Below, piece by piece: positions 1,047 through 48,906 of a DNA stretch of 48,906 nt. Under the pieces are notes generated by a model. That model saw only the letters and a program-made list of their open reading frames with translations. It was not told where the DNA came from and did no database searches. This stretch comes from Macrostomum lignano (taxonomy: Eukaryota). The number at the start of each line of letters is the position of its first letter. Positions within the stretch are counted from its first letter, which is position 1. Location: assembly GCA_002269645.1 (NCBI GenBank), contig NIVC01002253.1, positions 1-48,906 of the forward strand, in the 5' to 3' direction. A program made the translations under genes and the position numbers.

Positions 1047-1126
1047 TGATAGAAGCGCTAAATTTATGATCCAGTAGGAAAAGATGAATTCTTAAAAAAA
1101 CAAAGCTTATAAAACAAAACACTTAC

Positions 1127-6236: not shown

Positions 6237-9002
6237 ATGTATAAACTCTTGTTTCTGAAACTAAAATGCATATATATTTCTCATTACAGTATGTTCAAAT
6301 ATATGCTTATTCCAGTCCAAAGTGCAATGAGAATTATTAAAATGATGACAATAGCTAGTGCTAGTGGCACTATTGCATATTCTTCTTGGCTAGCTTTTCG
6401 ACCACTGACTAATGAAGAGAAGGCTAATTGGAATGCGATCTACATGGAGGACTCATCTATTAGGGTATGAGTGATATTTGAACTACATTTTTAATAACTT
6501 ACTAATTAGATAGCAAGTCATCTAACACTCATCATAAAGTAAAAGTTGCTCCCGCCTTTTACCCTTTTTGTACAAAAAGCTTCGAGTTTATCGTCGTCTA
6601 CCATTAAATGCGCTATCCCGACTGTGGGGTCGCTGCCAGCATGTCGAGCTGCCTGAATTCGCTCGCCAACCAGCCTACAGCCTGTATGCCCGATTGTTCC
6701 ATTGCAATTTAACTGAAGTGGCTAACAGTGACTTGACTGGGTACAGGAATCTGTCAGAATTCTTCAGGCGAGAGCTGCGACCCGATGCAAGACCTGTGGC
6801 AGCGAAAGTGGGCCTGGTGGCGCCCGCTGATGGCTTGGTGCTGCATCTGGGTCGGGCCGAACCTGATGGACGCCTGGAACAAGTCAAGGGTGTCGATTAT
6901 ACACTGCAGGTAGTCAGGGTGCTTGGATAGAGTAGATGTAGCTTGCAGATAGATGCTGTGAATTGCAGATAGCTAGATGCAGTAGATTGCTGATAGATAG
7001 AGTAGATTGCAGATAGATTCAGTAGATTGCAGATAGATTCAGTAGATTGCAGATAGATTCAGTAGATTGTAGACAGATTCAGTAGATTGCAGATAGATTC
7101 AGTAGGTTGCAGATAGATTCAGTAGGTTGCAGATAGATTCAGTAGGTTGCAGATAGATTCAGTAGGTTGCAGATAGATTCAGTAGGTTGCAGATAGATTC
7201 AGTAGGTTGCAGATGGATTCAGTAGGTTGCAGATAGATTCAGTAGGTTGCAGATAGATTCAGTAGGTTGCAGATGGATTCAGTAGGTTGCAGATAGATGC
7301 TGTGGATTACAGATAGATACAGTAGATTGCAGATAGATGCTGTGGATTGCAGATAGATACAGTAGATTGCAGATAGATGCTGTGGATTGCAGATAGATAC
7401 AGTAGATTGCAAATAGATGCTGTGGATTGCAGATAGATACAGCAGATTGTAGATAGATGCTTTGGATTGCAGATAGATACAGTAGATTGTAGATAGATGC
7501 TGTGGATTGCAGATAGATACAGTAGATTGCAGATAGATGCTGTGGATTGCAGATAGATACAGTAGATTGCAGATAGATGCTGTGGATTGCAGATAGATTC
7601 AGTAGGTTGCAGATGGATGCAGTAGATTGCAGATAGATGCAGTAGATTGCAGATAGATACAGCAGATTGTAGATATATGCTGTGGATTGCAGATAGTCTA
7701 TGAGATAGATACATTATATTGCGGATAAATGCAGTAGATTGTAGATAGATAAAGTAGACTTCATATAAAACACTCGTAAATAGATATAACGTTTATTCTA
7801 ATTATAAATTTTCGCTTTTTTCGATTGCTTTAATACACCGAAGTATTAATAATCGCTAAAAATCTGCCCCATGCAGAGCTTTCTCGGTCCGTTGTCCTCC
7901 GACAACTCAAACCCGCGCCTACCCGACTCAGAATATTACTCCCGATTGAAGACTCACTCATCAGGCAGCAGCCTGTACCACTGCGTCATCTATCTTTCGC
8001 CCGGCGATTATCATCGATTCCATTCGCCGACAGATTGGCAGGCGTCAAGACGGCGTCACTATCCCGGCTATTTGATGTCCGTGTCGCCTGGCGTGGCCGG
8101 GCTTGTCCGAGGCCTGTTCTGCTTGAACGAGCGAGCCGTGTTCACCGGCAGCTGGAGGCACGGATTCTTTGCTTATGCCGCGGTTGGCGCTACCAATGTG
8201 GGAAATATTCGAGTCTATGCGGATCAGGTGAGGGATGGTTAAAACTTGAGCATAAATTTATTTCGAAAGATACTTTCAAAATTTGGCGTATCTCTTCAAA
8301 ATCCTCAATTAATATGAGGTTTGATTCATGCTTAAAGATCTCTGAAGAAGCTTGGAGAGCCTCCCAGATCCTCAGTTGATGGGCCAGCCTCCCAGAGTGT
8401 CAGCTGCTGGGCCAGCCTCACAAATCCTCAGCTGCTGGGCCAGCCTCCCAGATCCTCAGATGCTGGGCCAGCCTCCCAGATCCTCAGTTGCTGGGCCAGC
8501 CTCCCAGATCCTCAGATGCTGGGCCAGCCTCCCAGATTCTCAGTTGCTGGGCCAGCCTCTAAGATCCTCAGTTGCTGGGCCACCAGCCTCCCAGATCCTC
8601 AGTTGCTGGGCCACCAGCCTCCCAGATCCTCAGTTGATGGACCAGCCTCCCAGATCATTAGTTGCTGGGCCAGCCTTCCAGATCCTCTGCAGTTTCTGGT
8701 CCCAAATGTTCGTATCAAAAAGCCAACGATCTGAAGCAGTTATTCCAACTAAGCTCATAAAGAACTGTCTATGGCCCCAACCGCAGGACCTAGTCACCAA
8801 TGCAGGCGGTCCGCTGGCTCCCTACCGAGATTTGGATTTGCAGTCTAAGCAGGGCGGCCTACGGCTTAGTAAAGGTGAACTGTTTGGCGAATTCGATCTG
8901 GGCAGCACTATAGTGCTGGTGTTTGAAGCTCCGGACAATTTCGAGTTTAAAGTGCATCCGGGTCAACGAGTTCGAGTTGGAGAGGCTTTAAGTAACTTGT
9001 GA
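6237..9002 (+). CDS. PISD: Phosphatidylserine decarboxylase proenzyme (mitochondrial type), 4 exons, ~374 aa
   Basis: Exons 6237-6464, 6580-6909, 7877-8227 and 8787-9002, all phase-0 GT-AG, total 1125 nt. Motifs: YRRLPLNALSRLWG, NLSEFFRRELRPDARP, APADG, YTLQ|SFLGP, IYLSPGDYHRFHSPTDW, VGATNVGNI and the autocleavage site GEFDLG|STIVLVFEAP. AATAAA at 9123. The exact start Met is uncertain. Confidence 0.95.
6940..7700. repeat. Minisatellite, 20-bp unit (AGTAGGTTGCAGATAGATTC) with 40-bp dimeric variant, PISD intron 2
   Basis: Exact 20-bp periodicity over 7081-7300, then alternating AGTAG/TGTGG units. Confidence 0.97.
8354..8685. repeat. Minisatellite, ~28-bp unit (GGGCCAGCCTCCCAGATCCTCAGTTGCT), PISD intron 3
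   Basis: About 11 tandem copies, producing the spurious N-terminal part of ORF 8352..9002. Confidence 0.95.
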
Positions 9003-9649: not shown

Positions 9650-24264
<14,615 letters not shown>

Positions 24265-26113
24265 AGCATAAATAAAAACAGGAATAGATTCTATTTTATG
24301 CACAAGATAACCAGAAACTATTACTCTTCTTTCCATATTAGAAAAACTTTACAATCTATCTAGTTATTTAAGTACCTGTTTAAAATTGTTAAAAAATGAG
24401 TATTTATGCATGCTGCCGCATATTATTTAACTATATCGTATTCTATATAATATTATTCCCTGCTGATAAATGATAATACTTTCATTTTGGGTATTAAAAA
24501 AATATTAATTTGTTTTTAATTTTTAACTAACTTTTACTATAGCTTTTACTAAAAGTTTTTATAATGCTATAAAAACCGATAGCTTAAACTGCTTTTTTTT
24601 CATAATAAATTTTTAAATTAAGATTACCGCACTTAGCAGTAGAGAATGAATTTGTAAGTTATTAAACAGAACTTGTAAGCACTTATTATAGAATGAATTT
24701 GCTCAAAAAGTTTTTAATTATTTAAGTGCAAAACATACCGCTCCTAAAATAAGTTTTAATTTAAAATATAAAGTTTTAATCTGCATCTGATCTTGATTAG
24801 GTTGTAGATTTTCAATAATATGTCTGTAGGACTGCAGAATTACTAAAACATAAAAGTCGAGCATCATTGAATGTCAACCTTTATATGAAACTAATATCTA
24901 AAGAAAATTAACATAAAGCAACGAGGGCTGCACATAACTGCAGAATAAAACAGCATTATACACAAATATGTCGGATTTTTTCGCTGAGTTTGCGGAAAGA
25001 TTCTCTAAAATAAATTTTTGGCAAAGAAGTTAAAACGACCATCTAATGCTATGCCGATTGACTATTTTTAAAAGATCTTTTACAGAAAATTGTATAAGTC
25101 ATTTCTTGTTGTTAAGAACAAATTTATACTTTGATGCATGAAGTTTTCTGACATTTGATTGTATTGTTTTGTTATTCTCTTCTGTCTAAAACCCCGGCAG
25201 ATTATGTACAGGTTGTGTCGATTATAAACATGAAATTAAATTGATAAATGCGAGTGATGAAATATCCCGCCGTGCTGACATTAGCCTATACTTCTTATTA
25301 ATGATAAAATAATGATAAAATTATTTCGAAAAAAATTCTGTCTTTGAGTACGCCTAATCGCTATTAGTGTATTAGTACTTTCTGTGAGTTGAGATAACCG
25401 TGGCGTTGTCAAATACATGCTGTATGCGTGAGCAATATTTACGAGTACTACGTACACTCGTAAATATTGCTACTATTGCAGCAATGCACCCACATCATGT
25501 AACATGCATGGTTAATGTTAAAGTTATCTTTAATTTATTGATCTGTCTGTTGTACATATTGTATACGTATAATTCATGTACGTATAATTCATGTTGTACG
25601 TCGGATAAAACGATTTCACAATATAATAATGAATTGTCATTTAACAGTAAGATACCAATACCAAGCTAGTAGTGGTACCATTATTACATGGACAAGTACA
25701 TGTACACGCAGTAATAATATGTAGGTAACACGTAGTTATAGACAGTGTAGCTTAATTGCATGCAACCATTGCATTACCTTCAACAAAAAATAGTATCTCT
25801 TTTAACTAGCCTGTACGAGCGTATTTGACTAGAATTTCTATTGTGCAGCTGTACATGCAGAGGCAGGTCATTGCCGGCCAGCTGCACTGGCTGACAGTAA
25901 GTAAAGCTGTGCAAGCATGCCATGTACGTAACTGTCAATTAAACTTGAATTTACACTATTGTACTTGCTGCTACTGCACTGCAAGAGATGCTGCAAAAGT
26001 GTAGGGCTGGGTTAACACAGCCGTTTTATATAAACAGAAGGTTTGACTCTCCTCAGTATAGCGCAGAAGAATACCTTCAACCATCTACAAAAGTAAGTTT
26101 TCTTCAATTTAAA

Positions 26114-29100
26114 ATGCTGCAAAGTTTACAAACTATGAGTTGGCACACAAAATCAAATCATATCGTTTGCCTCAGCTTATTGGCAATAATTGCATGGCAA
26201 CCATATTTTATTGCGGCCGAAAGCAAGTCTGCTTACACCGAAGCACTGCTTGGATTTGTTGATAATGTTCTATTGAGCAGCAACAAAGTGCCTCTAAGCA
26301 GCTACAATTCTAACGACTTCTCTATGGACCAGCTAATCCGAAGGCTTTCAGCAGCCTCACTTTCTCGTGGGGGAATTTTTCGCGACAACTTGGACACAAC
26401 TTGGACACTGGACGAGCTGTTGGAAAGTGCGGGCATAGGAGAGAACTGCACCAGAGATTTGAAACTTCTTGGGGAGGCCGTGCTTCGAATGAAAGGATGG
26501 GCTTTGCCGTGTGAGTGAATGCGATTTGTTTTGCGGGGAATCTTTCTTCTGAGGGCAATTTTCCGGATAAGAATCCAAAAGTGCATCTTTTTCAAAATTA
26601 GAAAAAATCTAAAGGGTAATCTTGCTCTAGGGGGATCCCTGGATTAGAATTCAGTGAGGAATTCTTCTATTTGGTGAAATCTTTTAGATAAGAATTCTCG
26701 TTAGGGGGAATCTTTTGCTTGAGAGAATTTTCCAGAAAAAAATCCAACGGGGAATCTTTGCCTTGAGAGAATTCTCCTGAAAAAAATCAAACAAGGAATC
26801 TTTCCCGAGAGAATTTTCCAGAAAAAATCCAACAGGATATCTTTACCGAGAGAATTTTCCAGAAAAAATCCAACAGGATATCTTTACCGAGAGAATTTTC
26901 CAGAAAAAATCCAACAGGATATCTTTACCGAGAGAATTTTCCAGAAAAAATCCAACAGGATATCTTTACCGAGAGAATTTTCCAGGAAAATCCAACATGA
27001 ATCTTTCCAGAGAGAATTTTCCAGAAAAAATCCAACATGAATCTTTCCAGAGAGAATTTTCCAGAAAAAATCCAACAGGATATCTTTACCGAGAGAATTT
27101 TCCAGAAAAAATCCAACAGGATATCTTTACCGAGAGAATTTTCCAGAAAAAATCCAACAGGATATCTTTACCGAGAGAATTTTCCAGAAAAAATCCAACA
27201 GGATATCTTTACCGAGAGAATTTTCCAGGAAAATCCAACATGAATCTTTCCAGAGAGAATTTTCCAGAAAAAATCCAACAGGAAATCTTTCCAGAGAGAA
27301 TTTTCCAGAAAAAATCCAACAGGATATCTTTACCGAGAGAATTTTCCAGGAAAATCCAACATGAATCTTTCCAGAGAGAATTTTCCAGAAAAAATCCAAC
27401 AGGAAATCTTTCCAGAGAGAATTTTCCAGAAAAAATCCAACAGGAAATCTTTCCAGAGAGAATTTTCCAGAAAAAATCCAACAGGAAATCTTTCAAGAGA
27501 GAATTTTCCAGAAAAAATCCAACAGGAAATCTTTACCGAGAGAGTTTTCCAGAAAAAAATCTAACGGAGAATATTTCTCGAGAGAGAATTCTTTAGATTA
27601 AAATCGAATAAAGAATTTTCCCTTTTGTTTAAATATTTAGAAATATCTTCTCTGAAATAATTCTCCAGGTAAAAAATCTAACGGGAATTTTTTTCTTCTA
27701 GATAATTCTTTAGTTGATCATCTGAAGATTTGTTAGAAAAAAAGACGAAAACTACTCGTATAAGTATAAAGATTCCAATCCACCACCAAAACAACACCTC
27801 ACCAGTCATCGACTCGATCGGCCGGCCGCAGGCGGGTCTACTCAACGGAGCCACTACTTGGTTGGGCAGCTTCGACCAGTGCCTGGCAGCTGGTGCCAAC
27901 TTCACAGACGAGAACGGCACAGTCGAGTCTGAGCAGTTCTCAGGCGCCTACTGCCTTCTGCAATTGCAAAGTTGGTCAGATAAATCCAAGTTAAAAATTT
28001 TAATTACGATTGGCACCTGTTGGCCCGACAGCTGCTCAATGCGGGACGCTGTTAATGCGACAAAGCATTTGGCAAATTTCACGTCGGTGGTCGACGTGGG
28101 GCGGCTGGATGTCAGGCCGGCGGCGCCTGACTGCCGATCGGCTGCTGGCGCCAAGACTGACAGCTTAGAGCCTGGCGCCATTGCTATGCTGTGAGCACAA
28201 TAAGAGTGCATGACTGTCTTTGAATATGTATGTAAAAAAACAATAACTCAAGAGAACAAAATCATTTTTATCGTGTCAAATTGCAGTCACATTAGTGTCA
28301 GATTGTACTCAAAATTAGTGTCAGATTGTGCTCAAATTAGTGTCAGATTAAATCCCAAATTAGTGTCAGATTGTACCCCAAATAAGTGCCAGATTTTACT
28401 CCAAATTAGTGTCAGATTAAATCCCAAATTAGTGTCAGATTGTATCCAATTTTGTGTCAGATTGTACTCCAAGTTAGTGTCAGATTGTATCCGAAATCAA
28501 TGTCAGATTGTACTCAAAATTAGTGTCAGATTAAATCCCAAATTAGTGTCAGATTTTACCCCAAATTAGTGTCAGATTGTACCCCAAATAAGTGTCAGAT
28601 TGTACCCCAAATAAGTGTCAGATTGTACCCCAAATAAGTGTCAGATTGTACCCCAAATTAGTGTTAGATTGTACTCCAAATAAGTATCAGATTGAACTCC
28701 AAACTAGTGTCAGATTGTACCCCAAATTAGTGTCAGATTGTACCTCAAATTAGTGTCAGATTGTACCCCAAGTTAGTGTCAGATTGTACCCCAAATTAGT
28801 GTCAGATTGTACCCCAAATTAGTGTCAGATTGTACCCCAAATTAGTGTCAGATTGACCCCAAATTAGTGTCAGCCTCTCTCATCTGACATCACAAAAGCG
28901 CCATCCTGAGCCTCATTGCCGCCTGCCTCATCGGCGGCACGGGCATCGACCTGTACCAGCGCAGCCGGTCAAGAAGCGCCGCTGCGGCCGCCGCCAAAGC
29001 GCCGGTGCAGGCCTCGGGTTCGGCTTCCTCTGCGGCCGCCGCGGTGGCAGCTGAAGCGGCCGCAGTCGGGTACAACGCCGACAACAATGGCGCGAACAAC

Positions 29101-32100
29101 GATTTCGACAGCAGTGAGACGGCGGGCGACGAGGAGGCGCTGATAGCAGCCACGGTTATCCATCGAGACAATCGGGGCGGAGGCGCCGGAATCGGCTGCT
29201 GCCGCTGCTGGGTAATGTTGCTGAATTTTCAATTTACCCCTCAGATGGCGCCAGCCCCAGAAATGGCCCCAACCCTTTTAACAATGGCGCCACCTCCCTT
29301 AACAGTAGCGTCACCCAATTAACAATGACACATCTTTCCCTTTACAATGGCGCCAACTCCCTTAATAGACGGCGCCAACCCCCTTAACAATGGCACTTCT
29401 TCCTTAGCAATGGCGCCCCCCATTAACAATTTCGCCACCCCATTAACAATGGCGCCTTTCCCTTAAAAATGACCCCAACCCCTTAACAATGGCGCCTTTC
29501 CCTTAACAATGACCCCAACCCCTTAACAATGGCGCCTTTCCCTTAACAATGACCCCAACCCCTTAACAATGGCGCCTTTCCCTTAACAATGGCGCCTTTC
29601 CCTTAACAATGACCCCAACCCCTTAACAATGGCGCCTTTCCCTTAACAATGGCGCCTTTCCCTTAACAATGACCCCAACCCCTTAACAATGGCGCCTTTC
29701 CCTTAACAATGGCGCCTTTCCCTTAACAATGACCCCAACCCCTTAACAATGGCGCCTTTCCTTTAACAATGGCGCCTTTCCCTTAACAATGGCGCCTTTC
29801 CCTTAACAATGACCCCAACCCCTTAACAATGGTGCTAACTCCCTTAACAATGGCGCCACCCAATTAACAATGGCGCCTTTCCCTTAACAATGGCGCCTTT
29901 CCCTTAACAATGGCGCCTTTCCCTTAACAATGACCCCAACCCCTTAACAATGGTGCTAACTCCCTTAACAATGGCGCCTTTCCCTTAACAATGACCCCAA
30001 CCCCTTAACAATGGCGCTAACTCTTTTAAAAATGGCGCCTTTTCCCTAACAATGGCGCTAACTCCCTTAACAATGGCGCTAACTCTTTTAAAAATGGCGC
30101 CTTTTCCCTAACAATGGCACTAACTCCCTTAATAACGGTGCCAACTCCTTTAACCAGCTAAAACTTCCATCGAACCACCAAACAACCATCTAGGCGGTCT
30201 AAAGTCCATCCTACTCTGCTTCTCCGTGAGGACAAACGCAGCCAAATTGATGGACCAACGACAGGCCTCCAGTAGCCTTCGATGCGTGAACGGAATCCGG
30301 TTCATCTCGATGTCCTGGGTCATCCTGAGTCACACCTACATGGTGGGCCTCATCAACGCATCAAACTTGGGCCAGCTGGTACCCCAGTGGTTGAACGATT
30401 GGACTTTTCAAGCCGTGCTCAATGCTACCGTGTCTGTTGATACCTTCTTTGTGCTCAGCGGGCTCCTTGCTACTTACTTGTTCCTGCGAGAGCTTGACAG
30501 GCGAGGGGGGCAGTTGAAACGAATTAATTGGTTGAGATTTTATTTGCACAGGTGAGCAGGGTCAGGTGAGACTGAATTTGAGTATCTGGAATTTTTACGG
30601 CTCGGGATCTGGGATTTGTAGGGTTGGGGATCTGGGATTTGTAGGGTTGGGGATCTGGGATTTGTAGGGTTGGGGATCTGGGATTTGTAGGGCTGGGGAT
30701 CTGGGATTTGTAGGGTTGGGGATCTGGGATTTGTAGGGCTGGGGATCTGGGATTTGTAGGGCTGGGGATCTGGGATTTGTAGGGCTGGGGATCTGGGATT
30801 TGTAGGGTTGGGGATCTGGGATTTGTAGGGTTGGGGATCTGGGATTTGTAGGGTTGGGGATCTGGGATTTGTAGGGTTGGGGATCTGGGATTTGTAGGGC
30901 TGGGAATCTGAGATTTGTATGGTTAGGGATTTAGGATTTGTAGGGTTGGGGATCTGGGATTTGTAGGGCTGGGAATCTGAGATTTGTATGGTTAGGGATT
31001 TAGGATTTGTAGGGCTGGGGATCTGGGATTTGTAGGGCTGGGGATCTGGGATTTGTAGGGCTGGGAATCTGAGATTTGTAGGGCTGGGGATCTGGGATTT
31101 GTAGGGCTGGGGATCTGAGATTTGTAGGGCTGGGGATCTGGGATTTGTAGGGTTGGGGATCTGGGATTTGTAGGGTTGGGGATCTGGGATTTGTAGGGTT
31201 GGGGATCTGGGATTTGTAGGGTTGGGGATCTGGGATTTGTAGGGTTGGGGATCTGGGATTTGTAGGGCTGGGGATCTGGGATTTGAAGGCCATAATCATA
31301 GTTTTTGTGAAAGCCTTCGTCTATGCCTAATATATATAAAAAAATTTAATTTTATAAATAATCCTTTCTGACCCTCCACAGGTACTGGCGTCTAACAGCC
31401 CCTTACATGCTGGTCCTGGGCGCGTACACAACCCTGGCCCAGTACCTGTACGACGGGCCAAGGTATCCGCGAAACGGGTTCGATGCCAACTGCCGAACTG
31501 TTTGGTGGCGCAACCTGCTGTACATAAATAATTTTTTCAGCATGAGGGATATGGTGAGAACTTTTGGCTTGGTTTCTTATAAAAGTCTTAAAATTCTGCT
31601 TCAAAGTTTCTTTATTTATATTTTAGGATGCTTAAGTCAGTAGTATAAGAACAGTACAAAATGTTTAGACAATTGGACTATGTCTATTGTCAAAAGTGTG
31701 TCTAGATCACTATCGTCAAAAGTATGTCTAAATCATTGTGAAAAGCATGTCTAGATCAGTGTAAAACGTACGTCTAGGTTAGTAAGTATGTCCAGATCAT
31801 CTTCAAAAATATGTCCAGATCATTGTCAAAAACCATATCTAGATCATTGTCAATAGCATGTCTAGATCATTGTCAAAAGCATGTCTAGATCATTGTCAAA
31901 AGCATGTCTAGATCATTGTCAAAAACCATTTTTAGATCATTGTCAAAAACCATATCTAGATCATTGTCAATAGCATGTCTAGATCAATGTCAATAGCATG
32001 TCTAGATCAATGTCAAAAGCATGTCTAGATCATTGTCAAAAACCATATCTAGATCCTTGTCAAAAACCATATCTAGATCCTTGTCAATAGCATGTCTAGA

Positions 32101-34892
32101 TCATTGTCAAAAACTATAACTAGATCATTGTCAATAGTATGTCTAGATCATTGTAAAAAAACATGTCTAGATCATTGTCAAAAGCATGTCTAGATCATTG
32201 TAAAAAAACATGTCTAGATCATTGTCAAAAGCATGTCTAGATCATTGTCAATAGCATGTCTAGATCATTGTCAAAAGCATGTCTAGATCATTGTCAAAAA
32301 CCATATCTAGATCATTGTCAATAGCATGTCTAGATCATTGTCAAAAGCATGTCTAGATCATTGTCAATAGCATGTCTAGATCATTGTCAAAAGCATGTCT
32401 AGATCATTGTCAAATGCATGTCTAGATCATTGTCAAAAGCATGTCTAGATCATTGTCAAAAGCATGTCTAGATCATTGTCAAAAGCATGTCTAGATCATT
32501 GTCAATAGCATGTCTAGATCATTGTCAAAAGCATGTCTAGATCATTGTCAAAAGCATGTCTAGATCATTGTCAATAGCATGTCTAGATCAATGTCAAAAG
32601 CATGTCTAGATCATTGTCAAAAACCATATCTAGATCCTTGTCAAAAACCATATCTAGATCCTTGTCAATAGCATGTCTAGATCATTGTCAAAAACTATAA
32701 CTAGATCATTGTCAATAGTATGTCTAGATCATTGTAAAAAAACATGTCTAGATCATTGTCAAAAGCATGTCTAGATCATTGTAAAAAAACATGTCTAGAT
32801 CATTGTCAAAAGCATGTCTAGATCATTGTCAAAAGCATGTCTAGATCATTGTCAAAAGCATGTCTAGATCATTGTCAATAGCATGCCTAGATCATTGTCA
32901 AAAACCATATCTAGATCATTGCCAAAAGCATGTCTAGATCATTGTCAAAAACCATATCTAGATCATTGTCAAAAGCATGTCTAGATCATTGTCAAAAGCA
33001 TGTCTAGATCATTGTCAAAAGCATGTCTAGATCATTGTCAAAAGCATGTCTAGATCATTGTCAAAAGCATGTCTAGATCATTGTCAAAAGCATGTCTAGA
33101 TCATTGTCAAAAGCATGTCTAGATCATTGTCAAAAGCATGTCTAGATCATTGTCAAAAGCATGTCTAGATCATTGTCAAAAGCATGTCTAGATCCTTGTC
33201 AATAGCATGTCTAGATCATTGTCAAAAACTATAACTAGATCATTGTCAATAGTATGTCTAGATCATTGTAAAAAAACATGTCTAGATCATTGTCAAAAGC
33301 ATGTCTAGATCATTGTAAAAAAACATGTCTAGATCATTGTCAAAAGCATGTCTAGATCATTGTCAAAAGCATGTCTAGATCATTGTCAAAAGCATGTCTA
33401 GATCATTGTCAATAGCATGCCTAGATCATTGTCAAAAACCATGTCTAGATCATTGTCAAAAGCATGTCTAGATCATTGTCAAAAGCATGTCTAGATCATT
33501 GTCAAAAGCATGTCTAGATCATTGTCAAAAACCATATCTAGATCATTGTCAAAAGCATGTCTAGATCATTGTCAATAGCATGTCTAGATCATTGTCAAAA
33601 GCATGTCTAGATCATTGTCAAAAGCATGTCTAGATCATTGTCAAAAGCATGTCTAGATCATTGTCAAAAGCATGTCTAGATCATTGTCAAAAGCATGTCT
33701 AGATCATTGTCAAAAGCATGTCTAGATCATTGTCAAAAGCATGTCTAGATCATTGTCAAAAGCATGTCTAGATCATTGTCAAAAGCATGTCTAGATCATT
33801 GTCAAAAGCATGTCTAGATCATTGTCAATAGCATGTCTAGATCATTGTCAAAAGCATGTCTAGATCATTGTCAAAAGCATGTCTAGATCATTGTCAAAAG
33901 CATGTCTAGATCATTGTCAATAGCATGTCTAGATCATTGTCAAAAACCATATCTAGATCATTGTCAAAAGCATGTCTAGATCATTGTCAATAGCATGTCT
34001 AGATCATTGTCAAAAGCATGTCTAGATCATTGTCAAATGCATGTCTAGATCATTGTCAAAAGCATGTCTAGATCATTGTCAAAAGCATGTCTAGATCATT
34101 GTCAAAAGCATGTCTAGATCATTGTCAATAGCATGTCTAGATCATTGTCAAAAGCATGTCTAGATCATTGTCAAAAGCATGTCTAGATCATTGTCAATAG
34201 CATGTCTAGATCATTGTCAATAGCATGTCTAGATCATTGTCAAAAGTGTTGGCTTAGAGATAACCCACGGAATAACTGAATATTCAAGCAGTTGATAAAT
34301 GCTTAACCGATCACCTCTTACACCGTCCCGCCAGTGCATGTCCTGGAGCTGGTACCTGGCCAACGACATGCAATTCTACGCTGTCAGCCCGCTATTCATG
34401 ACTCTCATGGCCAAACGGCCAGCCTTGGGAGTCGCCGCCGCTATGCTAGCCATCGTTGCGAGCAGTGTCGGCTTGGGAGTTTACTGCACACTGGCTGGCA
34501 TCGGGGTGTTTGGCCCCGGCACTGGAGGTGAGGAGATGTGGAACCGAGACGCTCTGGACTCAATTTACATCCGGCCCTGGTTCCGCATAGGACCGTATCT
34601 GGTGGGCAGTCTGGCTGGTATGCTGACTCATCGACTGTTGTCGGCAGAGCTTGTCGATGCCAGATTTCCATATCGACGACAGAGGGGCAGCCTGAGGCTG
34701 CACTGGTCTGTGCGACTGCTGGGCTGGGCTACAGCGGCCGTTCTCTGCCTCAGTGTGCTCTACGGACTGTTCGATGTGCAGCGAGGCCTTGTGGTGCTGT
34801 CGCAGCCTGTGGCGTCTCTGTATAATGCCACCTTTAGGCTGGCTTGGTCCATTGGTGAGCGGTGAATGCGATTGGTTAAGTTAGCTAGCTAA

Positions 34893-37444: not shown

Positions 37445-40400
37445 ATGGCTAACCCATCCCGCCTCATAACCATCCTGTTAGCCCTGATATCCCATCATCA
37501 GCTGACGCGCTTGGCTTTTGGCCTCTGCCCAGCACCGTCGGATCCTCCCATGGCATCGGACGACTTTTATCTCGGCAATTCGCCGTCAACTGGCGAAGAC
37601 GAGATCGACTCGCAATGGTTGGAACACTCCGGCTTCTGCTACCGGTACGTCGGCAGGCGGAAGGCCTGGTACCCGGCTGAGCTGGTCTGTCGCCACTGGG
37701 GCGGGCATCTGGTATCGATTCGTTCGACAGAAGAGAATCGCCTGATTGGCAGACTAACCAGATGTCGGAGAGTCTGGATTGGCCGGTTCGCTACGGATCT
37801 GCATCGGATTGGCGAGCCGAGCAGCTACGAGTGGACCGAGGACGAGGCCGCGGCAGCTTCATCGTCGGGGAATGGCAGCAGTGGAGCCGCGGATGCCGGA
37901 TTCTATCAGAGCTGTCACAATGTGTCGACGCAATCGATGCCAGACCGACACGCTGGGGCTCTGCTAGCGGAAGGACTGGCTTGGACTAACGAGCATTATC
38001 ACGAGAGACTGCCGTTTGTGTGCAAAACTGCCTCTACTGTTCATGATGCTGGCAGGTGAGTTTCGTTCGGCAGTAAATTGATTTGCAGTGGTTAGATTTT
38101 GGTTTAGAATGAGTCAGCTGCGCCTTCTTATGCTGGAGATTATAGGTTGGCCGTATCATGAGTTTAGTGTAGGACACTTTATCAGTTTAGTGTAGGACAT
38201 TTGATCAGTTTAGTGTAGGATATTTGATCAGTTTAGTGTAGGACGTTTGATCAGTTTAGTGTAGGACATTTGATCAGTTTAGTGTTGGACATTTGATCAG
38301 TTTAGTGTAGGACATTTGATCAGTTTAGTGTAGGACGTTTGATCAGTTTAGTGTAGGACATTTGATCAGTTTAGTGTAGGGCGTTTGATCAGTTTAGTGT
38401 AGGACGTTTGATCAGTTTAGTGTAGGACGTTTGATCAGTTTAGTGTAGGACATTTGATCAGTTTAGTGTAGGACATTTGATCAGTTTAGTGTAGAACATT
38501 TGATCAGTTTAGTGTAGGACGTTTGATCAGTTTAGTGTAGGACGTTTGATCAGTTTAGTGTAGGACGTTTGATCAGTTTAGTGTAGGACATTTGATCAGT
38601 TTAGTGTTGGACATTTGATCAGTTTAGTGTAGGACATTTGATCAGTTTAGTGTAGGGCGTTTGATCAGTTTAGTGTAGGACATTTGATCAGTTTAGTGTA
38701 GGACGTTTGATCAGTTTAGTGTAGGACATTTGATCAGTTTAGTGTAGGACGTTTGATCAGTTTAGTGTAGGACGTTTGATCAGTTTAGTGTAGGACGTTT
38801 GATCAGTTTAGTGTAGGACATTTGATCAGTTTAGTGTAAAACGTTTGATCAGTTTAGTGTAGGACGTTTGATCAGTTTAGTGTAGGACGTTTGATCTGTT
38901 TAGTGTAGGACATTTGGTGGTTCGATTTGTTTATTGTAGGACGTTTGATCAGTGTAGTGTAGGACGTTTGATTAGTTTGTCAAGCGTTTGTAACCCGCTT
39001 ATTGTGGGAGATGTATCATCAGTATGGTGTGAGGCAGTATAACCTGCCCAATTCACACGGGTCAAAGGTACTTCTGTTTCTATAAGCTGATCCTATCATC
39101 TACTGTATTGTACACTGCCTCCTCCCTTCTCCAGATGCTCCTCGCCAATGTCGCAGTTCAATGGCCACTGCTACTGGTTGTCCGACTTTGTCACCAGTTT
39201 CGTCGACGCCAGCCTGCACTGCGAGCGCGAGTTGGGCGGTCATCTAGCTTCGGTGCACAGTCCCGCTGAGGCCAGATTGATCGCCTCGCTCGAGTTGGAT
39301 AAGGACACCTGCCAGTTAAGCACCGTGTGGATTGGCTTAATCAGACAGAGTCCCTGTCGTAGGAGCCACGCTTATCCTGTTAGGGAGAATGAGGTACAGC
39401 CGTGGGAATTTGATAAAGGGGAACCTATTGATATACCTGCTGCGGGGCAAGACTGCCGAAACTAGTCAAACAAGTACTGTCGATTTATGTAATGCTCGTA
39501 GATGGTTAGACATCTGCATTACGTAGTTTTCGAGATTGGTCAGAAAATTACGAGCAAGTCTGTTGGGAATACTGCAGGTGAATCAGCTGATAAGACTGCA
39601 GGTGAATCAGTTGATAAGACTGCAGGTGAATCAGTTGATCAGACTGCAGGTGAATCAGTTGATAAGACTGCGGGTGAATCAGTTGATAAGACTACAGATG
39701 AATCAGTTGATTAGACTACAGGTGAACCAGTCGATTAGACTACAGGTAAATCTGTTGATAATACTACATGTGAATCAGTTGATAAGACTACAGGTGAATC
39801 AGTTGATTAGACTACAGGTGAACCAGTCGATTAGACTACAGGTAAATCTGTTGATAATACTACATGTGAATCAGTTGATAAGACTACAGATGAATCAGTT
39901 GATTAGACTACAGGTGAACCAGTCGATTAGACTACAGGTAAATCTGTTGATAATACTACATGTGAATCAGTTGATTAGACTACAGATAAAAAGTTCTTAC
40001 TTAAGTAGTCTATGAGACGTCCTTGGGAATCTTATAGATTTATGGTGCTAAGTAAGAAGTTTCACCTCTAGAAAGAAGACAATTCAAAAGCACTTAAAAC
40101 CAATTTAACTAAAACATAACAAACCTAAAACTAACTTATTCGATTTATAAAGTTGGTTCGATTCAAGGGCTAACCCTGTGCACCTGCGTGCCTGCATAAA
40201 GTACGCTTGCGTGTGCTCAAGGGCAGAATTGCCTGAACACGATGTCGGCAAAGGCATTGTCCCAGGTCGCTCATACCCTTTTTGCAATGAACATTATTAA
40301 TATTCCCACAGCCCTGCTATCAGTGGACCGATTTCTCAGGTGAGCTCTCCGGCTATCCATACTGGGCCAACGGTCATCCTCTCCAAACCGATGACGGTTT

Positions 40401-40632: not shown

Positions 40633-41909
40633 TCTTTGGCTTGTTATAATATATGTCTTTTATAACCTTTATAATGATTCTTTTTAGAAAAATACTTACA
40701 AATGCGAAGCAACGCTACTAATAGTAGACGCAACACACATGCGCGTCAAATTTTATGCGTAAAATTAATATTTTTACTAAAGAAATAACTTCTGCAACTG
40801 GTGAACTCTTTGTATTGCAGCAAAAACGGCTACTCAGAACTATTTTATTTGCATTTAGTTTACCAAATACCAAATTTTATTTCAAAATAAGTTACTATTG
40901 AATGCAATGGACGGCCTAATGAATAAAAGTACTTCTCAACTTTTAAAGATCTCGTAACTTTTTATTTAATCGAAATTTCTCGTTACTATATTTGGTAGCT
41001 GCCAATATTTTTTGGATTATTGATCTTTTATGCCTCTCGGACAGACAGAAATTCGAGAAGTGGAAAACAAAATTTGACAACAGAATCCGTAATAATACGG
41101 AAATCTAATATTTTCATGAGTTTCGCATAGAATACTTCCCACTGTCGTCCTTAGCAAGGCCAGTTCACTACCCAAAGTTGTGCAATCTAGCTTATTTCAC
41201 GCATTAATGTCCACTTCAAAGATCAAATCCTACTCGTAATTGAAAAGTTCTGATGCCAAAATGGGCGACAACATGAGCCCTGGAATGCGAGCTGGAGTCG
41301 ATAGCTGCTGCATGGCCGGATCAGTTGACTAAAATTGCTGAGAGATCCTATCGAGGTCCCGGGAGATGAAATTAATAGAGTCTCAAATTAATAGAATCTC
41401 CCGTGTTGGGTGTCCAATATTCCCCTTGTCCCATCCAAGTATAAAGAGGCCCCCAATGGTTTCTGCAAACTAATTATCTTCCTGTTTCATTTCGTTCAAA
41501 GTAAAATTAAAGCAACAAATTTATTTCTAAGGATGCTCTAAATGGGTCAAAGAATTTTGACTTTGCGTCTGTCTCTCGCGCCACGGCACCTGGGTTCGAT
41601 TCCTTAATTTTGCGGGTCGCGTTCATTTGGGGCAGCTGTGTGCACGAAAATTAGTGCTGAGCGTACATGTTGTCTTGTGATTCACAGCCAGTATATTAAG
41701 GACAGCCCCCAAAGCATAGCGAGTGTGCATGCATAATGATTAGAAAGTCAGGGCCGCTGTACACCCAGTGTGAGCGTGTGTACGAGTGTTTGCCTGCGTA
41801 CGGTATTAAAGCGCTTGCATGTGCTCGGGAGTCAGCGGAATGTTCAGAAATGGGACGATGTCACTGACGACGTTGCGCCACGGGGTGCCCTTGTGCAATT
41901 ATTCGAATA

Positions 41910-42655
41910 TAGCTTTTTGCAGCCCATTTGGGCTTACGCGCATCGAATTTAATCCAAGATACGTTTGCCAATGTAACAGAGCTTTTGTTTATGGTAGCAA
42001 GGCTGGCACAGCGGCATTTAATTTGGTCCAAGAAGCATCAATTTGGTCATTTAGTTCATTTGCAGCTCAGTCCCAGAATTGTGGACCATATGCTAGGCCG
42101 TTGAACGAATGTCATTGGCTTGTGATCGAAGCACTCGACGGAGGTGAACACCCAAAGGACATTGCAAGGTTGCTGAGTGTAAAAGAAAAGGTGGTTTACA
42201 GCATCCAGCAGCGCGTTGAAACTCTGCCGGCAGAGATTGCCTGCGAAAGGGTGGCAATCGCCAAGGAAAGTTGCTCGAGAGCCTCAGGTCCAACTGCTAC
42301 TCGATGCAGTGGAGACGAACCCTTTGTTGACGTTTCAGAAAATGCAGCATAAGTTGAGGGAACAGCTCCAGTTGGCTATCAGATTTCGACTATCAGCAGA
42401 GCTCTGGAAAAGCAACTGAAAACTTTTGGTAGAGACGCTGACATTCCAGCGGTGCGCAACAACCTGCAGACGGTTGAGAGAAGGCAAGAGTTTGTCCAAT
42501 GGCTCACGAGTGTTTGGACCAAATTGATGCTTTTTGGACCAAATTAAATGCCGCTGCGCCAGCCTTGCTACCATAGACAAAAGCTCCGTTACATTGGCAA
42601 ACGTATCTTGGATTAAATTCAATGCGCGTAAGCCCAAATGGGCTGCAAAATGCTA
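41910..42655 (+). mobile_element. Internally deleted Tc1/IS630-like DNA transposon A (~746 bp)
   Basis: ~139-bp TIRs (41910-42048 versus 42517-42655) flanked by TA at 41908-09 and 42656-57. The interior encodes a frameshifted transposase N-terminus (WLVIEALDGGEHPKDIARLLSVKEKVVYSIQQR; LLDAVETNPLLTFQKMQHKL; RNNLQTVERRQEFVQW). No DDE domain. Confidence 0.85.
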
Positions 42656-45960: not shown

Positions 45961-46623
45961 CTTTATTTGTTATGTGATTAGTTGCTTTCAAAAATGAATA
46001 AAGTTTTTTTGCAGACAGCGGTCTTGGGTGCTTTATATTTACCAGTATATATAATTTAATCACACTTTCTGGAATCCGGAATGTCGGGAAGAATTTTCTA
46101 GAATCAGTGAGCGCAAATTCAAACTGCTGATGCTTACGACAAAGTTTGCGCTCTTACATTTAAAATTTAAACTTACATTTTCTTTAAAAATCATATATAA
46201 CCATACGATACGGAAGTTTGTGGAAAGGTCACTCACTTCACGAGAAAAAGTCTAGAACAGAGAAACTAAAAAAATAGTTGTATCGTCTAAACGGATTTGG
46301 ACAAAAATTGTTTCGCCAGAGACAAATACTTCACTTAAGTACACTTTTTAGACTAGATAAAGATGCGTTTGAAATTTGAAATTCTGAAAGAAGGCGAGGT
46401 ACTGTAGATTTAGTGCAATTAAACACAGAATGCTTCCATAAAAACTATTTAGCTGTTTTGTTGAAACAGGTAAAAAGCAGGAATGTTTTTTTAATGATTT
46501 TCCATGAGCCTTGAAATTAATTTCCCAGAAACCATATAAAAATTCTCTAGTTCCTTGTAAAAACAAATCTAACGGAACTTATTTAGTAGGCCCAAAACTT
46601 ACAAATGGTTGGATCAAGATAGA

Positions 46624-46667
46624 CCAATCAGAGATCAGCTGAGGCCACACCCTGAAGCCTAATAAAT
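46624..46667 (+). promoter_or_regulatory. Candidate core promoter of the peptide gene
   Basis: CCAAT (46624), E-box CAGCTG (46636), CCACACCC (46645) and TATA-like TAATAAAT (46660), clustered 105-150 bp upstream of the ATG. These are motif matches only. Confidence 0.4.
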
Positions 46668-46772: not shown

Positions 46773-47066
46773 ATGAGTTCTCAACGCATTTTAAACTGTG
46801 CTCTGCTAATTTTATCTTGCAGCTTTCTGCTGATGAGTTCGCAGCCCGATCTGATTGCGGCTACTCCCATCGAACTTAACGAAGAGGTCGTTGGTTCGAA
46901 TCCCGACCAGACTGTGGACAATATTAGCAACGAGGAACGACGCGAACTGTCAGTGTTGTGCGTTGAGTTGGGTTGCGTCTGGAACGAGATGCGAACTGCC
47001 TGCAGCTGCCGCTCCTCTGTCAGCCGGAAGCGGTCGCCGCCCAGGAAGCCGCCAGGGATTTGGTGA
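46773..47066 (+). CDS. 97-aa secreted prepropeptide of unknown family (signal, acidic spacer, RR, 4-Cys peptide, RKR, SPPRKPPGIW)
   Basis: Single ORF in a GC-richer island. Hydrophobic N-terminus ILNCALLILSCSFLLM, acidic segment, basic cleavage sites RR and RKR, and AATAAA at ~47164. Confidence 0.75.
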   Translation: MSSQRILNCALLILSCSFLLMSSQPDLIAATPIELNEEVVGSNPDQTVDNISNEERRELSVLCVELGCVWNEMRTACSCRSSVSRKRSPPRKPPGIW

Positions 47067-48906
47067 TGCGGAATAATAATTAAAAGCTAACAATGGAAAA
47101 ACAGAATCCTCCCTTATTAACTCTGTGCGATTGCGAATTTTATTTTACAGCTGAAAATTTATGAATAAAAATATAACAAAATTTAAGAACTGTTTGGTTT
47201 TTCGACAGAGTTAATTATAGAAATTAAGTTAATATCAGCATGCATGACTATTACCTTCTATTACTTTTCTATTGTAACTGCTAGTGGCTTTTTAGCTATG
47301 ATTAGTTTGCTTTGACAACGCTTTGCGCTGGAAATTGCTGTTCAATTATCTCTTTTGTTCGTGGCTAATTTTGACTGTGCTGTGAGAGTGAAGTGGCTCT
47401 CGACACGCAATGCCTGCTGAGCGTACAAGAGATTTTCAAACTTAGCAATTTAGTAGAGGTCAATCAGGCTCTTGAGCCAAAATATCAATCGCGTATCGGA
47501 GCTACCGGTATAGTGACAATAACGATGAGTCATATAGGGTGTGTTTAGCTTTTGGCTTTAGCTTTTGGCACGCAAAATACCAGAAAAAATCTAATTTAGC
47601 GTCTCATAAAATTCAAATTAAAAGAAATTAATAAAAGTATTCTAAATTTGTTAGCAACAAATTAAATTTGAGTCGTGAGTTGTACTTTCTAAAGACTTTT
47701 TTCTAAGAAACATGCTTTACATAGCATACAGGCAATCATCTGCATGTATTGTAAAAATTATTCTATATATCGTGCAGGCTGAACGATTTATCACACTTTA
47801 GGCGCACATCAAGTACAGAGCAAGGCGCACATGTAGAATAAGCGAATGCGTTCAAGAGTTCGTAAATATCTTGGACGAAGTTATATAAGCTTAAAAAATC
47901 ACTTGCAACACTTGGACGAGAGTGCTTTGCAGTAGCCATGTTTGAACACAACTCCCGAGGGATCATTTGGAAATCTTAGATATCAAATTATAAATGCGAA
48001 TCAATGCATCGAGTCAGTTTGATAGGTTTTCTAATTTTCTTAAGCTGATTGCCTTCCTATTTAAATGAAGAGGAGTATAACTAGCTACATGTAATTGCAT
48101 ACAGATGCATCAAGTGCGTCATGCAAATTGAACTGTTACAGCAGAAGTTCGGATCTTATACGAAACAGGCTAGGGCAGGTTTGATGTGGATTTCTTCGCC
48201 TGATAATTTAATATTCTTTATTTGAAAATAAATTTAAGACACGACGTATGGTAAGTGGGCAGATTAAGTATTTATCTTAACAGGCACTTTCTGTGAATGC
48301 AGCTCAACACAGATGAATTTCAAGATAACGATGTTAACTTTTAATTTCCGGGAAAAACCATCTCGCGTTATAAAACGTTAAAAAATGGTGTAAATTAGTT
48401 ACCTAGTATGCTTGTTAAAATATATTCGTCTAAATATAAATGTTATCGGCACTTGCATTTTGTACACGTTAGTCTACATGTAAGTGTGCATGTATTTATG
48501 ATAAACAGAGTAAAGATGCAGTCATATTCTATGTGTATTACGAGTACACAATCTTAAATATAAGCATCTGAGAAACTTGCAAAAAGCACACAGCGTCAGC
48601 GAACTGATGCGTATTCTCTGTAGCGGTTCCAGTCGTCCTAAACTCATCACGATAATTAAATGTAATTTGAATCAGTTCCAACTGAGTAATTATCGTAGAT
48701 CAAACCAGTTAAACATATTAAAAATTCTAGCTTCAAAAATAGTAACTTTTTCTTAACGAAATTTCAGCACCAGCTTTTTTTAAAAGAATAAGTTCGCTTG
48801 TAATTATAGCTTTACATCTTCTTTAAACTAAGCAGTCAACAATTTCACATAATTTCAACTTTCACATCCCCATCCGATTTTTTCGATAATTTTAGAAATT
48901 TGTTTT

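What the first reader, a model, noticed from the sequence alone, without database searches (positions are those of the whole stretch)
46773..47066. Orphan prepropeptide: 4-Cys peptide plus a C-terminal KPPGIW peptide resembling cnidarian GLWamides
The layout is that of a neuropeptide or toxin precursor: signal (probable cleavage near IAA|TPI), acidic spacer, RR, then ELSVLCVELGCVWNEMRTACSCRSSVS (C-x4-C-x8-C-x-C), RKR and SPPRKPPGIW-stop. The tail is one conservative change from Hydractinia He-LWamide II (KPPGLW-amide) but has no amide-donor Gly, so it would be a free acid. I do not recognise the Cys framework. One precursor releasing a disulfide-bonded peptide and a Pro-rich Trp-terminal peptide, with its own compact promoter and poly(A) signal, is the best candidate here for an undescribed signalling, antimicrobial or seminal-fluid system. 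The GLWamide resemblance covers only 6 residues and may be chance.
Basis: partly seen in the sequence, partly recalled or inferred. Interest (0 to 1): 0.72.

Follow-up and report, generated by a model that had tools for sequence, protein, structure and literature searches.

The report
Orphan flatworm secreted cysteine-peptide precursor gene
This is a real, already annotated but uncharacterised gene of the flatworm Macrostomum lignano; it encodes a small secreted, cysteine-containing peptide precursor with no known relatives, and its likeness to cnidarian GLWamide neuropeptides fails every test of that family that matters.

Summary
The 97-codon ORF at 46773..47066 (+) is exactly as described. 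The window is a whole contig of the Macrostomum lignano Mlig_3_7 assembly. The ORF is an annotated hypothetical protein of gene cluster Mlig005551, and that annotation was built only from transcripts. Four genomic copies exist, 98-100% identical in coding sequence and flanks alike, so they are recent polyploid duplicates and say nothing about constraint.

Coding character is supported by a GC jump confined to the ORF, by codon-position GC matching neighbouring exons, and by a non-random layout: signal peptide, acidic propiece, RR, a 4-Cys segment, RKR, and a basic Pro-rich tail ending in Trp. AlphaFold2 predicts a helix plus beta-hairpin for the Cys segment with a disordered tail. No Pfam, PDB sequence or Foldseek match was found, and no homologue among 1.8 billion representative proteins.

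A control search showed that these databases hold no Macrostomum transcriptomes, so conservation in congeners could not be tested.

The GLWamide link is rejected: the tail is GIW rather than GLW, has no amide donor and occurs once, and M. lignano has a separate true Wamide precursor.

Best reading: a lineage-restricted, probably convertase-processed secreted peptide. Whether it signals, defends or is a gland or seminal product is undecided. Interest is low to moderate.

The parts
46773..47066 (+). Complete intronless CDS (97 aa plus TGA) of the Mlig005551-family gene copy on this contig
   Evidence: The ORF is. An identical 97-aa protein is called at this place in GenBank assembly GCA_002269645.1. 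Its cluster mate P0001 is PAA83552.1, BOX15_Mlig005551g4. GC and codon-position GC are typical of coding sequence.
46773..46862 (+). Predicted signal peptide, residues 1-30: n-region MSSQR, h-region I6-M21, likely cleavage at IAA|TP
   Evidence: The most hydrophobic 15-residue stretch is residues 6-20 (Kyte-Doolittle mean 2.42). Sites compatible with the (-3,-1) rule lie after residues 22, 29 and 30. AlphaFold2 gives a helix at 3-19 with low confidence. This is a heuristic; SignalP was not available.
46863..46937 (+). Acidic propiece, residues 31-55 (TPIELNEEVVGSNPDQTVDNISNEE), net charge -7, with an N-I-S glycosylation sequon at N50
   Evidence: Charge was computed. The segment is low-confidence or disordered in the AlphaFold2 model.
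46938..46943 (+). Dibasic RR56-57, a candidate convertase site
   Evidence: Read from the sequence. It lies inside predicted helix 53-65 of the full-length model, which is weak evidence against accessibility. In copy L004 the next residue is K (E58K), which makes RRK.
46944..47024 (+). Four-Cys segment, residues 58-84 (ELSVLCVELGCVWNEMRTACSCRSSVS), Cys at 63, 68, 77 and 79; predicted helix 59-65 plus beta-hairpin 69-71/76-78
   Evidence: AlphaFold2 on the 40-mer gives pLDDT 90-92 for its first 20 residues. The same secondary-structure elements appear in the full-length model at pLDDT of about 80. Foldseek found no PDB match at E<=0.001.
47025..47033 (+). Tribasic RKR85-87, a candidate convertase site
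   Evidence: Read from the sequence. It lies in the region predicted to be disordered.
47034..47066 (+). Basic Pro-rich tail SPPRKPPGIW (residues 88-97) and the TGA stop; no Gly amide donor
   Evidence: Read from the sequence. Net charge is +2. The stop codon is identical in all four copies.
46535..46666 (+). Promoter-like motifs upstream: TATAAA at 46535, CCAAT at 46624, TATA-like AATAAA at 46661. The ATG at 46773 is the first ATG after 46605 and has A at -3
   Evidence: Their use was not verified because no RAMPAGE or RNA-seq data could be reached here.
47079..47169 (+). Candidate poly(A) signals: ATTAAA at 47079 and AATAAA at 47164
   Evidence: GC falls to 0.24-0.36 directly after the stop codon.

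Best explanation
This is an intronless, transcribed gene (cluster Mlig005551) with no detectable relatives outside Macrostomum lignano. It is present in four near-identical copies left by the recent genome duplication of this flatworm.

It encodes a 97-residue secretory precursor. The inferred pathway is as follows:
1. The signal peptide is removed near A30|T31.
2. The acidic 25-residue propiece is cut off by a subtilisin-like proprotein convertase at RR56-57.
3. This releases a peptide of about 40 residues. Its first ~22 residues form a compact helix plus beta-hairpin held by two disulfides among C63, C68, C77 and C79. Its last ~16 residues are a flexible, basic, Pro-rich tail ending in a free-acid Trp.
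4. The tail may be released separately at RKR85-87.
5. The product acts outside the cell.

Shown here: the ORF, its coding-like composition, the existence of an annotation derived from transcripts, the four copies, and the absence of any known family. Inferred: secretion, convertase processing, the fold and an extracellular role.

Among extracellular roles I lean slightly towards a signalling peptide of the orphan 'secreted peptide prohormone' kind known from planarians, over a defence peptide or a gland or seminal product. The evidence here cannot separate these. It is not a GLWamide or Wamide peptide.
For: - The ORF and its features are.
- The identical protein is called at this position in GCA_002269645.1 and at two further contigs, with a fourth copy differing by 2 residues.
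- The GenBank annotation of this assembly comes only from StringTie/TACO transcripts, the de novo transcriptome and TransDecoder ORFs (PMC5730564). A transcript colinear with the ORF therefore exists.
- The GC jump is confined to the ORF, and codon-position GC equals that of the PS-decarboxylase, NRF-6-like and lectin exons.
- The ordering of hydrophobic N-terminus, Cys cluster and multibasic runs is non-random.
- Hydrophobicity and the (-3,-1) rule fit a signal peptide.
- Two independent AlphaFold2 runs give the same helix plus hairpin, with pLDDT 90-92 in the 40-mer.
- M. lignano has a PC2 homologue expressed throughout its neurons (PMC12435804).
- Planarians have 19 orphan 'secreted peptide prohormone' genes, and their PC2-dependent peptides were examined by mass spectrometry (PMC2953531).
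Against: - No expression pattern, peptide detection or conservation data could be obtained.
- The four copies differ as much in the CDS (4 substitutions in 294 bp: 2 synonymous, 2 non-synonymous) as in the flanks (23 in 1500 bp). There is therefore no sign of purifying selection.
- RR56-57 sits inside the predicted helix of the full-length model, so it may not be a cleavage site.
- The AlphaFold2 runs used a single sequence, and neither model matched anything in the PDB.
- Small orphan secreted proteins of gland cells are probably more numerous in this animal than prohormones. This is a base-rate argument from my own knowledge of the seminal-fluid and gland screens; it was not tested here.
- The cluster id was found in no paper text or held supplement.
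Confidence: 0.5

Rival explanations
1. It is a neuropeptide or hormone prohormone that releases two bioactive peptides: a 27-residue two-disulfide peptide and the decapeptide SPPRKPPGIW. Both would be made in PC2-positive neurons or endocrine cells and act on receptors.
For: The layout is signal, acidic spacer, RR, peptide, RKR, peptide. Orphan prohormones are common in flatworms (spp-1 to spp-19). PC2 is present in M. lignano neurons. After RKR cleavage the tail would start with X-Pro-Pro, an aminopeptidase-resistant N-terminus of the kind described for Hydra peptides.
Against: No amidation signal is present. RR lies within a predicted helix. No homologue was found among the flatworm prohormones held in the protein databases. 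Expression is unknown.
Confidence: 0.2
2. It is a host-defence (antimicrobial-type) peptide. An anionic propiece (net -7) would neutralise a cationic mature 40-mer (net +4) until secretion. The design would combine a disulfide-braced head with a Pro/Arg/Lys-rich tail ending in Trp.
For: The charges are segregated. The predicted helix plus hairpin has C-x-C in a strand, which recalls cystine-stabilised alpha/beta peptides. From general knowledge, chimeric Pro-rich plus Cys-rich antimicrobial peptides exist in crustaceans (penaeidins, arasin), though there the Pro-rich part comes first, the reverse of the order here.
Against: The Cys head itself is net -1 and overall cationicity is modest. Spacing is C-x4-C rather than C-x3-C, and there are only two disulfides. 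There is no structural match to defensins or any other PDB entry and no sequence family.
Confidence: 0.13
3. It is a gland secretion, for example a prostate (seminal fluid), pharyngeal, cement or adhesive gland product. It would be secreted more or less whole, and the basic pairs would be incidental.
For: It is a small, orphan, signal-peptide-bearing protein. Many prostate-limited transcripts of this kind have been reported for M. lignano (PMC5977470 is the relevant screen). RR lies within a predicted helix.
Against: The id Mlig005551 is absent from the held supplements of the seminal-fluid screen. Those files are small and may use other ids, so this is weak. Three multibasic runs are more than composition predicts (2.2% of shuffles).
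Confidence: 0.15
4. It is a young or chance ORF on a transcribed locus, with no functional peptide product.
For: There are no relatives anywhere and no excess constraint among the four copies. An ORF of 97 codons is not rare by chance.
Against: The GC rise is confined to the ORF, with GC3 equal to that of real exons. The signal, propiece, Cys-domain and tail order is never reproduced in 100,000 shuffles. AlphaFold2 predicts a compact fold with confidence. The frame is intact in all four copies, although the flanks carry indels: 12 indel columns upstream, 158 downstream and none in the CDS.
Confidence: 0.1
5. It is a flatworm homologue of the cnidarian GLWamide / bilaterian Wamide family.
For: KPPGIW against KPPGLWamide gives 5 identities and 1 conservative change over 6 residues.
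Against: The motif is GIW rather than GLW, and the review excludes GIW peptides and reports loss of activity on Leu replacement. Amidation is essential and there is no Gly donor. There is one copy rather than many. There is no precursor homology. M. lignano's Wamide-type peptides come from a different gene, Mlig032062.g1.
Confidence: 0.02

Closest known systems
Planarian 'secreted peptide prohormone' genes (spp-1 to spp-19; Collins et al. 2010, PMC2953531)
   Same: These are short flatworm precursors with a signal peptide and basic cleavage sites.
   Different: There is no sequence similarity to any of them. This precursor carries a 4-Cys folded segment and no amidation site. No mass-spectrometry or expression evidence exists for it.
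Cnidarian GLWamide peptides (He-LWamide II, KPPGLWamide)
   Same: Both have a Pro-Pro-Gly-aliphatic-Trp C-terminus, and the tail would start with X-Pro-Pro after RKR cleavage.
   Different: Ile replaces Leu, there is no amide donor, there is one copy rather than 11-18, the peptide sits at the extreme C-terminus behind a Cys domain, and the precursors are not homologous.
Cystine-stabilised helix / cystine-stabilised alpha-beta motif (C-x3-C in a helix bridged to C-x-C in a strand; insect and plant defensins, scorpion toxins) - from general knowledge
   Same: A predicted helix is followed by a beta-hairpin. One Cys pair lies in or just after the helix and a C-x-C lies in the last strand.
   Different: The spacing is C-x4-C, not C-x3-C. 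There are only two disulfides and the core is only about 22 residues. Foldseek found no match to any PDB entry. The disulfide connectivity is unknown.
Macrostomum lignano Wamide-type propeptide Mlig032062.g1 (GRTNNKNVFRWamide, AYGSMPWamide; PMC9234716)
   Same: Same organism, and both give Trp-terminal peptides.
   Different: Those peptides are written as amidated and come from a different gene cluster. The present tail would be a free acid.

Membership tests
GLWamide family (Cnidaria) | C-terminal Gly-Leu-Trp motif | tested here: not met
   The C-terminus is G-I-W. [quoted passage not shown]
GLWamide family (Cnidaria) | C-terminal alpha-amidation (a Gly donor after Trp), stated to be essential for activity | tested here: not met
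   TGG is followed directly by TGA in all four copies. The need for amidation is stated.
GLWamide family (Cnidaria) | Precursor with many tandem peptide copies | tested here: not met
   There is one copy here. Hydra has 11 copies, and Hydractinia has 17 copies of He-LWamide II plus one of He-LWamide I.
GLWamide family (Cnidaria) | Protected N-terminus (X-Pro, X-Pro-Pro or pyroGlu) | tested here: met
   After RKR cleavage the tail would begin S-P-P. The feature is described. It is generic and not diagnostic.
GLWamide / Wamide superfamily | Detectable homology of the precursor to known members | tested here: not met
   phmmer against 1.84 billion representatives found only the protein's own cluster, plus two chance hits inflated by summing over internal repeats. 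M. lignano's Wamide-type precursor is a different gene.
Flatworm peptide prohormone (functional class, Collins et al. 2010) | Signal peptide plus peptides flanked by basic convertase sites | tested here: met
   The hydrophobic N-terminus and (-3,-1) sites are. Multibasic runs are enriched relative to shuffles. This is sequence-level evidence only.
Flatworm peptide prohormone (functional class, Collins et al. 2010) | Processed peptides detected by mass spectrometry; dependence on PC2 | not testable with these tools
   No peptidomic data for M. lignano could be reached.
Flatworm peptide prohormone (functional class, Collins et al. 2010) | Expression in neurons or endocrine cells | not testable with these tools
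   The id was not found in paper texts or in held supplements. The single-nucleus atlas paper has no supplements held.
Cystine-stabilised alpha-beta / cystine-stabilised helix motif | C-x3-C in the helix | tested here: not met
   The spacing is C63-VELG-C68, which is C-x4-C.
Cystine-stabilised alpha-beta / cystine-stabilised helix motif | C-x-C in a beta-strand | tested here: inconclusive
   C77-S-C79 overlaps predicted strand 76-78. This is a prediction only.
Cystine-stabilised alpha-beta / cystine-stabilised helix motif | Structural similarity to solved members | tested here: not met
   Foldseek against the PDB gave no hit at E<=0.001 for either model. Sensitivity is poor for a core of about 22 residues.
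Insulin/relaxin-like peptides | A-chain CC-x3-C-x8-C together with a B chain carrying two Cys | tested here: not met
   C-x4-C-x8-C superficially fits the A-chain spacing, but the adjacent CC is missing. The region between signal peptide and RR has no Cys, so there is no B chain. There is no Pfam hit.

The most novel reading that the evidence does not exclude
The gene is a true dual-product prohormone of an early-branching flatworm. One product would be a two-disulfide helix-hairpin peptide with a Cys framework not seen in any solved structure. The other would be a non-amidated, Pro-rich, Trp-terminal decapeptide. Each would have its own receptor, which would make this a new peptide signalling system restricted to Macrostomum or macrostomorphs.
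Probability: 0.1. Interest if true: 0.5.

Novelty: new member of a known kind. Interest (0 to 1): 0.22.

Why it matters
If the product is a processed bioactive peptide, it would add a lineage-specific ligand, and possibly a new small disulfide fold, to the toolkit of a transgenic, RNAi-amenable flatworm model. It would also be easy to test by in situ hybridisation, RNAi and peptidomics. As it stands, it is one of many uncharacterised small secreted proteins of this genome. It bears on no long-standing question, and the link to cnidarian GLWamides, which would have been the surprising part, does not hold.

Tried and rejected
**Homology searches, all negative**
- Pfam scan at E<=10: no family.
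- Word-indexed search of 5.8 billion protein clusters: only the protein's own cluster.
- Full phmmer against 1.84 billion representatives: the protein's own cluster plus P0002 and P0003. These are a 1739-aa repeat-bearing helicase-like protein and a 2414-aa protein built of long tandem repeats. Each repeat matches the propiece at only 25-28 bits, the Cys framework is not matched, and the E-values come from summing over repeats. I rejected both as chance hits.
- PDB sequence search: nothing.
- Foldseek against the PDB with both AlphaFold2 models: nothing at E<=0.001.
- JGI metagenome scan: nothing.
- tblastn of the window and the four loci for paralogues: none.
- Rfam and tRNA scans of the window: nothing.

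**Constraint from the four copies**
- This is uninformative, because the flanks are as similar as the CDS.

**Transcript contigs**
- Exact-protein look-up found only the four GenBank genome contigs.
- A control search with the PS-decarboxylase exon gave a best hit of only 67% identity. The protein collections therefore hold no Macrostomum transcriptome ORFs, and 'no relatives' says nothing about other Macrostomum species.

**Literature**
- 'Mlig005551', PAA83552, A0A267GE81, PPGIW and CVELGCVW appear in no paper text.
- They appear in no held supplement of five M. lignano papers.
- The Brand 2020 supplements do not use this id format, so their silence is meaningless.

**Ideas considered and dropped**
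- Insulin A-chain likeness: there is no CC pair and no B chain.
- Read-through or splicing past the stop to supply an amide-donor Gly: the annotated transcript-derived protein ends at the same stop.

Full report
**1. What is there**

The window is the whole 48,906-bp contig NIVC01002253.1 of the Macrostomum lignano Mlig_3_7 assembly, GCA_002269645.1.

MSSQRILNCALLILSCSFLLMSSQPDLIAATPIELNEEVVGSNPDQTVDNISNEERRELSVLCVELGCVWNEMRTACSCRSSVSRKRSPPRKPPGIW-stop

The same 97-aa protein is a called gene here and on two other contigs, NIVC01002254.1 and NIVC01001021.1. A fourth copy on NIVC01000415.1 is PAA83552.1, 'hypothetical protein BOX15_Mlig005551g4'. It differs by two residues, E58K and V61M. Because the annotated product equals the genomic ORF, the coding region has no intron.

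**2. Is it more than chance?**

Length alone is not. About three ATG-ORFs of at least 97 aa are expected in a shuffled window. The real window has 31, mostly read through minisatellites. Three other things argue for a true coding sequence.

- **Composition.** GC is 0.49-0.63 inside the ORF and falls to 0.24-0.36 directly outside it. GC at codon positions 1/2/3 is 0.50/0.49/0.61. That is the same profile as the exons in this window that Pfam confirms as phosphatidylserine decarboxylase, NRF-6-like acyltransferase and C-type lectin.
- **Order of residues.** In 100,000 shuffles of the protein, an N-terminal hydrophobic block this strong occurs in 0.13%, a 4-Cys cluster this tight in 5.6%, and three or more multibasic runs in 2.2%. 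All three together never occurred. This test was chosen after seeing the sequence.
- **Transcript origin of the annotation.** The GenBank annotation of this assembly was built only from StringTie/TACO transcripts, the de novo transcriptome and TransDecoder ORFs (PMC5730564). A gene model here therefore implies a transcript. I could not see the reads themselves.

**3. The four copies**

Over 3.3 kb the four loci are about 98% identical in flanks and CDS alike.

- The CDS carries 4 substitutions, all in one copy: 2 synonymous and 2 non-synonymous. It has no indels.
- The 1.5 kb upstream carries 23 substitutions and 12 indel columns.
- A LIM-domain gene lies about 4.7 kb downstream in at least two of the other three copies.

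These are therefore syntenic duplicates, not a mobile element. That fits the 180 Mb of blocks at least 95% identical reported for this karyotype. The duplicates are too young to show constraint. The conservation of the Cys and basic sites among them means nothing.

**4. Anatomy of the product**

| Residues | Feature | Basis |
|---|---|---|
| 31-55 | Acidic propiece, net charge -7, with an N-I-S sequon | |
| 56-57 | RR | |
| 58-84 | 4-Cys segment, C-x4-C-x8-C-x-C, net charge -1 | |
| 85-87 | RKR | |
| 88-97 | SPPRKPPGIW, net charge +2 | |

AlphaFold2 was run without an alignment, because none can be built. It gives the same picture twice. The full-length model has a helix at 53-65 and strands at 69-71 and 76-78, with pLDDT of about 80, and the rest is of low confidence. 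The 40-mer alone has a helix at 59-65 and the same hairpin, at pLDDT 90-92, with a disordered tail.

The Cys segment therefore looks like a compact two-disulfide helix-hairpin. C63 lies in the helix, C68 just after it, and C77 and C79 in the last strand. In the full-length model the helix runs through RR56-57. That is weak evidence against cleavage at RR. RKR lies in the flexible part.

**5. Relatives and known families**

None were found.

- Pfam: nothing, even at E<=10.
- Word-indexed search of 5.8 billion clusters: only the protein's own cluster.
- phmmer over 1.84 billion representatives: its own cluster plus two large repeat proteins. Each of their repeats matches the propiece at 25-28 bits, and the library E-values come from summing over repeats. 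I reject both as chance.
- PDB sequence search, Foldseek with both models, and a JGI metagenome scan: nothing.
- No paralogue in the window or in the four loci.

There is an important caveat. A control search with the conserved PS-decarboxylase exon from this window found nothing above 67% identity. These collections therefore hold no Macrostomum transcriptome ORFs. 'Orphan' means orphan among annotated proteomes.

**6. The GLWamide idea**

The same review gives the family's features, and this tail fails the ones that matter.

- The motif is GLW. Replacing Leu abolishes activity, and -GIWamide peptides are explicitly said not to belong to the family.
- Amidation is essential. Here Trp is followed directly by the stop codon in all four copies.
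- Family precursors carry many copies: 11 in Hydra, and 17 of He-LWamide II plus one of He-LWamide I in Hydractinia. This one carries a single copy.
- Only the generic X-Pro-Pro N-terminus is shared.

In addition, M. lignano already has a propeptide, Mlig032062.g1, that yields amidated Trp-terminal peptides, GRTNNKNVFRWamide and AYGSMPWamide (PMC9234716). The six-residue likeness is best read as coincidence.

**7. Other likenesses considered**

- **Cystine-stabilised helix / alpha-beta motif.** The predicted helix-hairpin with C-x-C in a strand recalls this motif, which by general knowledge has C-x3-C in the helix bridged to C-x-C in a strand. Here the spacing is C-x4-C, there are only two disulfides, and no structural match was found. 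It is a resemblance, not membership.
- **Insulin A chains.** C-x4-C-x8-C superficially fits the A-chain spacing. There is no CC pair and no Cys-bearing B chain.
- **Planarian spp genes.** The closest functional class is the set of 19 orphan 'secreted peptide prohormone' genes of planarians (PMC2953531). That class is defined by layout plus peptidomics. Only the layout can be shown here.

**8. Mechanism**

Most likely (about 0.5) this is a secreted, convertase-processed, disulfide-stabilised peptide acting outside the cell. A PC2 homologue is expressed throughout M. lignano neurons (PMC12435804).

Within that reading I cannot separate three roles:
- a signalling peptide (about 0.2);
- a defence peptide with an anionic propiece masking a net +4 product (about 0.13);
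- a largely unprocessed gland or seminal product (about 0.15).

A non-functional young ORF remains possible (about 0.1). The composition, the layout and the intact frame in all four copies, against indel-bearing flanks, argue against it.

**9. Verdict**

The gene model is already public as a hypothetical protein. Small orphan secreted precursors are a known kind in flatworms. I rate it a new member of a known kind, with low to moderate interest (0.22). The decisive data already exist or are easy to obtain: browser tracks, the cell atlas, congeneric transcriptomes and peptidomics. None of them could be reached with the tools here.

Noticed in passing
window 31-1065, 2565-2914, 6938-7758, 8358-8687, 13607-14233, 15268-16074, 17075-17798, 18549-18901, 19180-20492, 21629-21981, 23574-23871, 26721-27585, 28291-28873, 29262-30150, 30584-31289, 31686-34246, 38161-38916, 39559-39987: About twenty minisatellite arrays (periods 13-44 bp, up to 110 copies) plus an (ACAG)n microsatellite fill a large part of the contig. 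They generate most of the long spurious ORFs in the six-frame list. This fits the roughly 15% simple and tandem repeats reported for this genome.
   Followed up: partly
window 6568-9002 (+): Three exons of a phosphatidylserine decarboxylase gene (Pfam PF02666 in three consecutive pieces). The ORF holding the third piece also reads through a 28-bp minisatellite at 8358-8687, which is probably intronic.
   Followed up: partly
window about 25988-34865 (+): An NRF-6-like gene (nose-resistant-to-fluoxetine N-terminal domain at 27730-28194, acyltransferase-3 domain at 34299-34865). Its introns hold very large minisatellites, for example 31686-34246 with 110 copies of a 23-mer.
   Followed up: partly
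window 37445-38059 (+): A complete 204-aa ORF with a hydrophobic N-terminus and a C-type lectin domain (PF00059). No gene with exactly this product is on record in the contig index, so it may be unannotated or spliced differently.
   Followed up: partly
window 41819-42352 (+): A 177-aa ORF with a weak winged helix-turn-helix (HTH_29) match below Pfam's cut-off. It may be a transposase remnant.
   Followed up: no
L001, L002, L004 about 9770-10294: In the other copies a called gene starts about 4.7 kb downstream of the peptide gene. Pfam marks it as LIM-domain in L002 (505 aa) and L004 (612 aa); the 612-aa gene at the same place in L001 has no Pfam hit on record. The window contig ends 1.84 kb after the peptide gene, before this neighbour.
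   Followed up: no
(control search with window 7871-8242): The large protein collection returned no hit above 67% identity for a conserved M. lignano exon, not even the species' own annotated protein. Negative homology results for Macrostomum genes in these databases should therefore be read with care.
   Followed up: partly
window 46944 and 46953 (copy L004): The only amino-acid differences among the four copies (E58K, V61M) fall at the very start of the putative mature peptide, next to RR. E58K turns RR into RRK.
   Followed up: no
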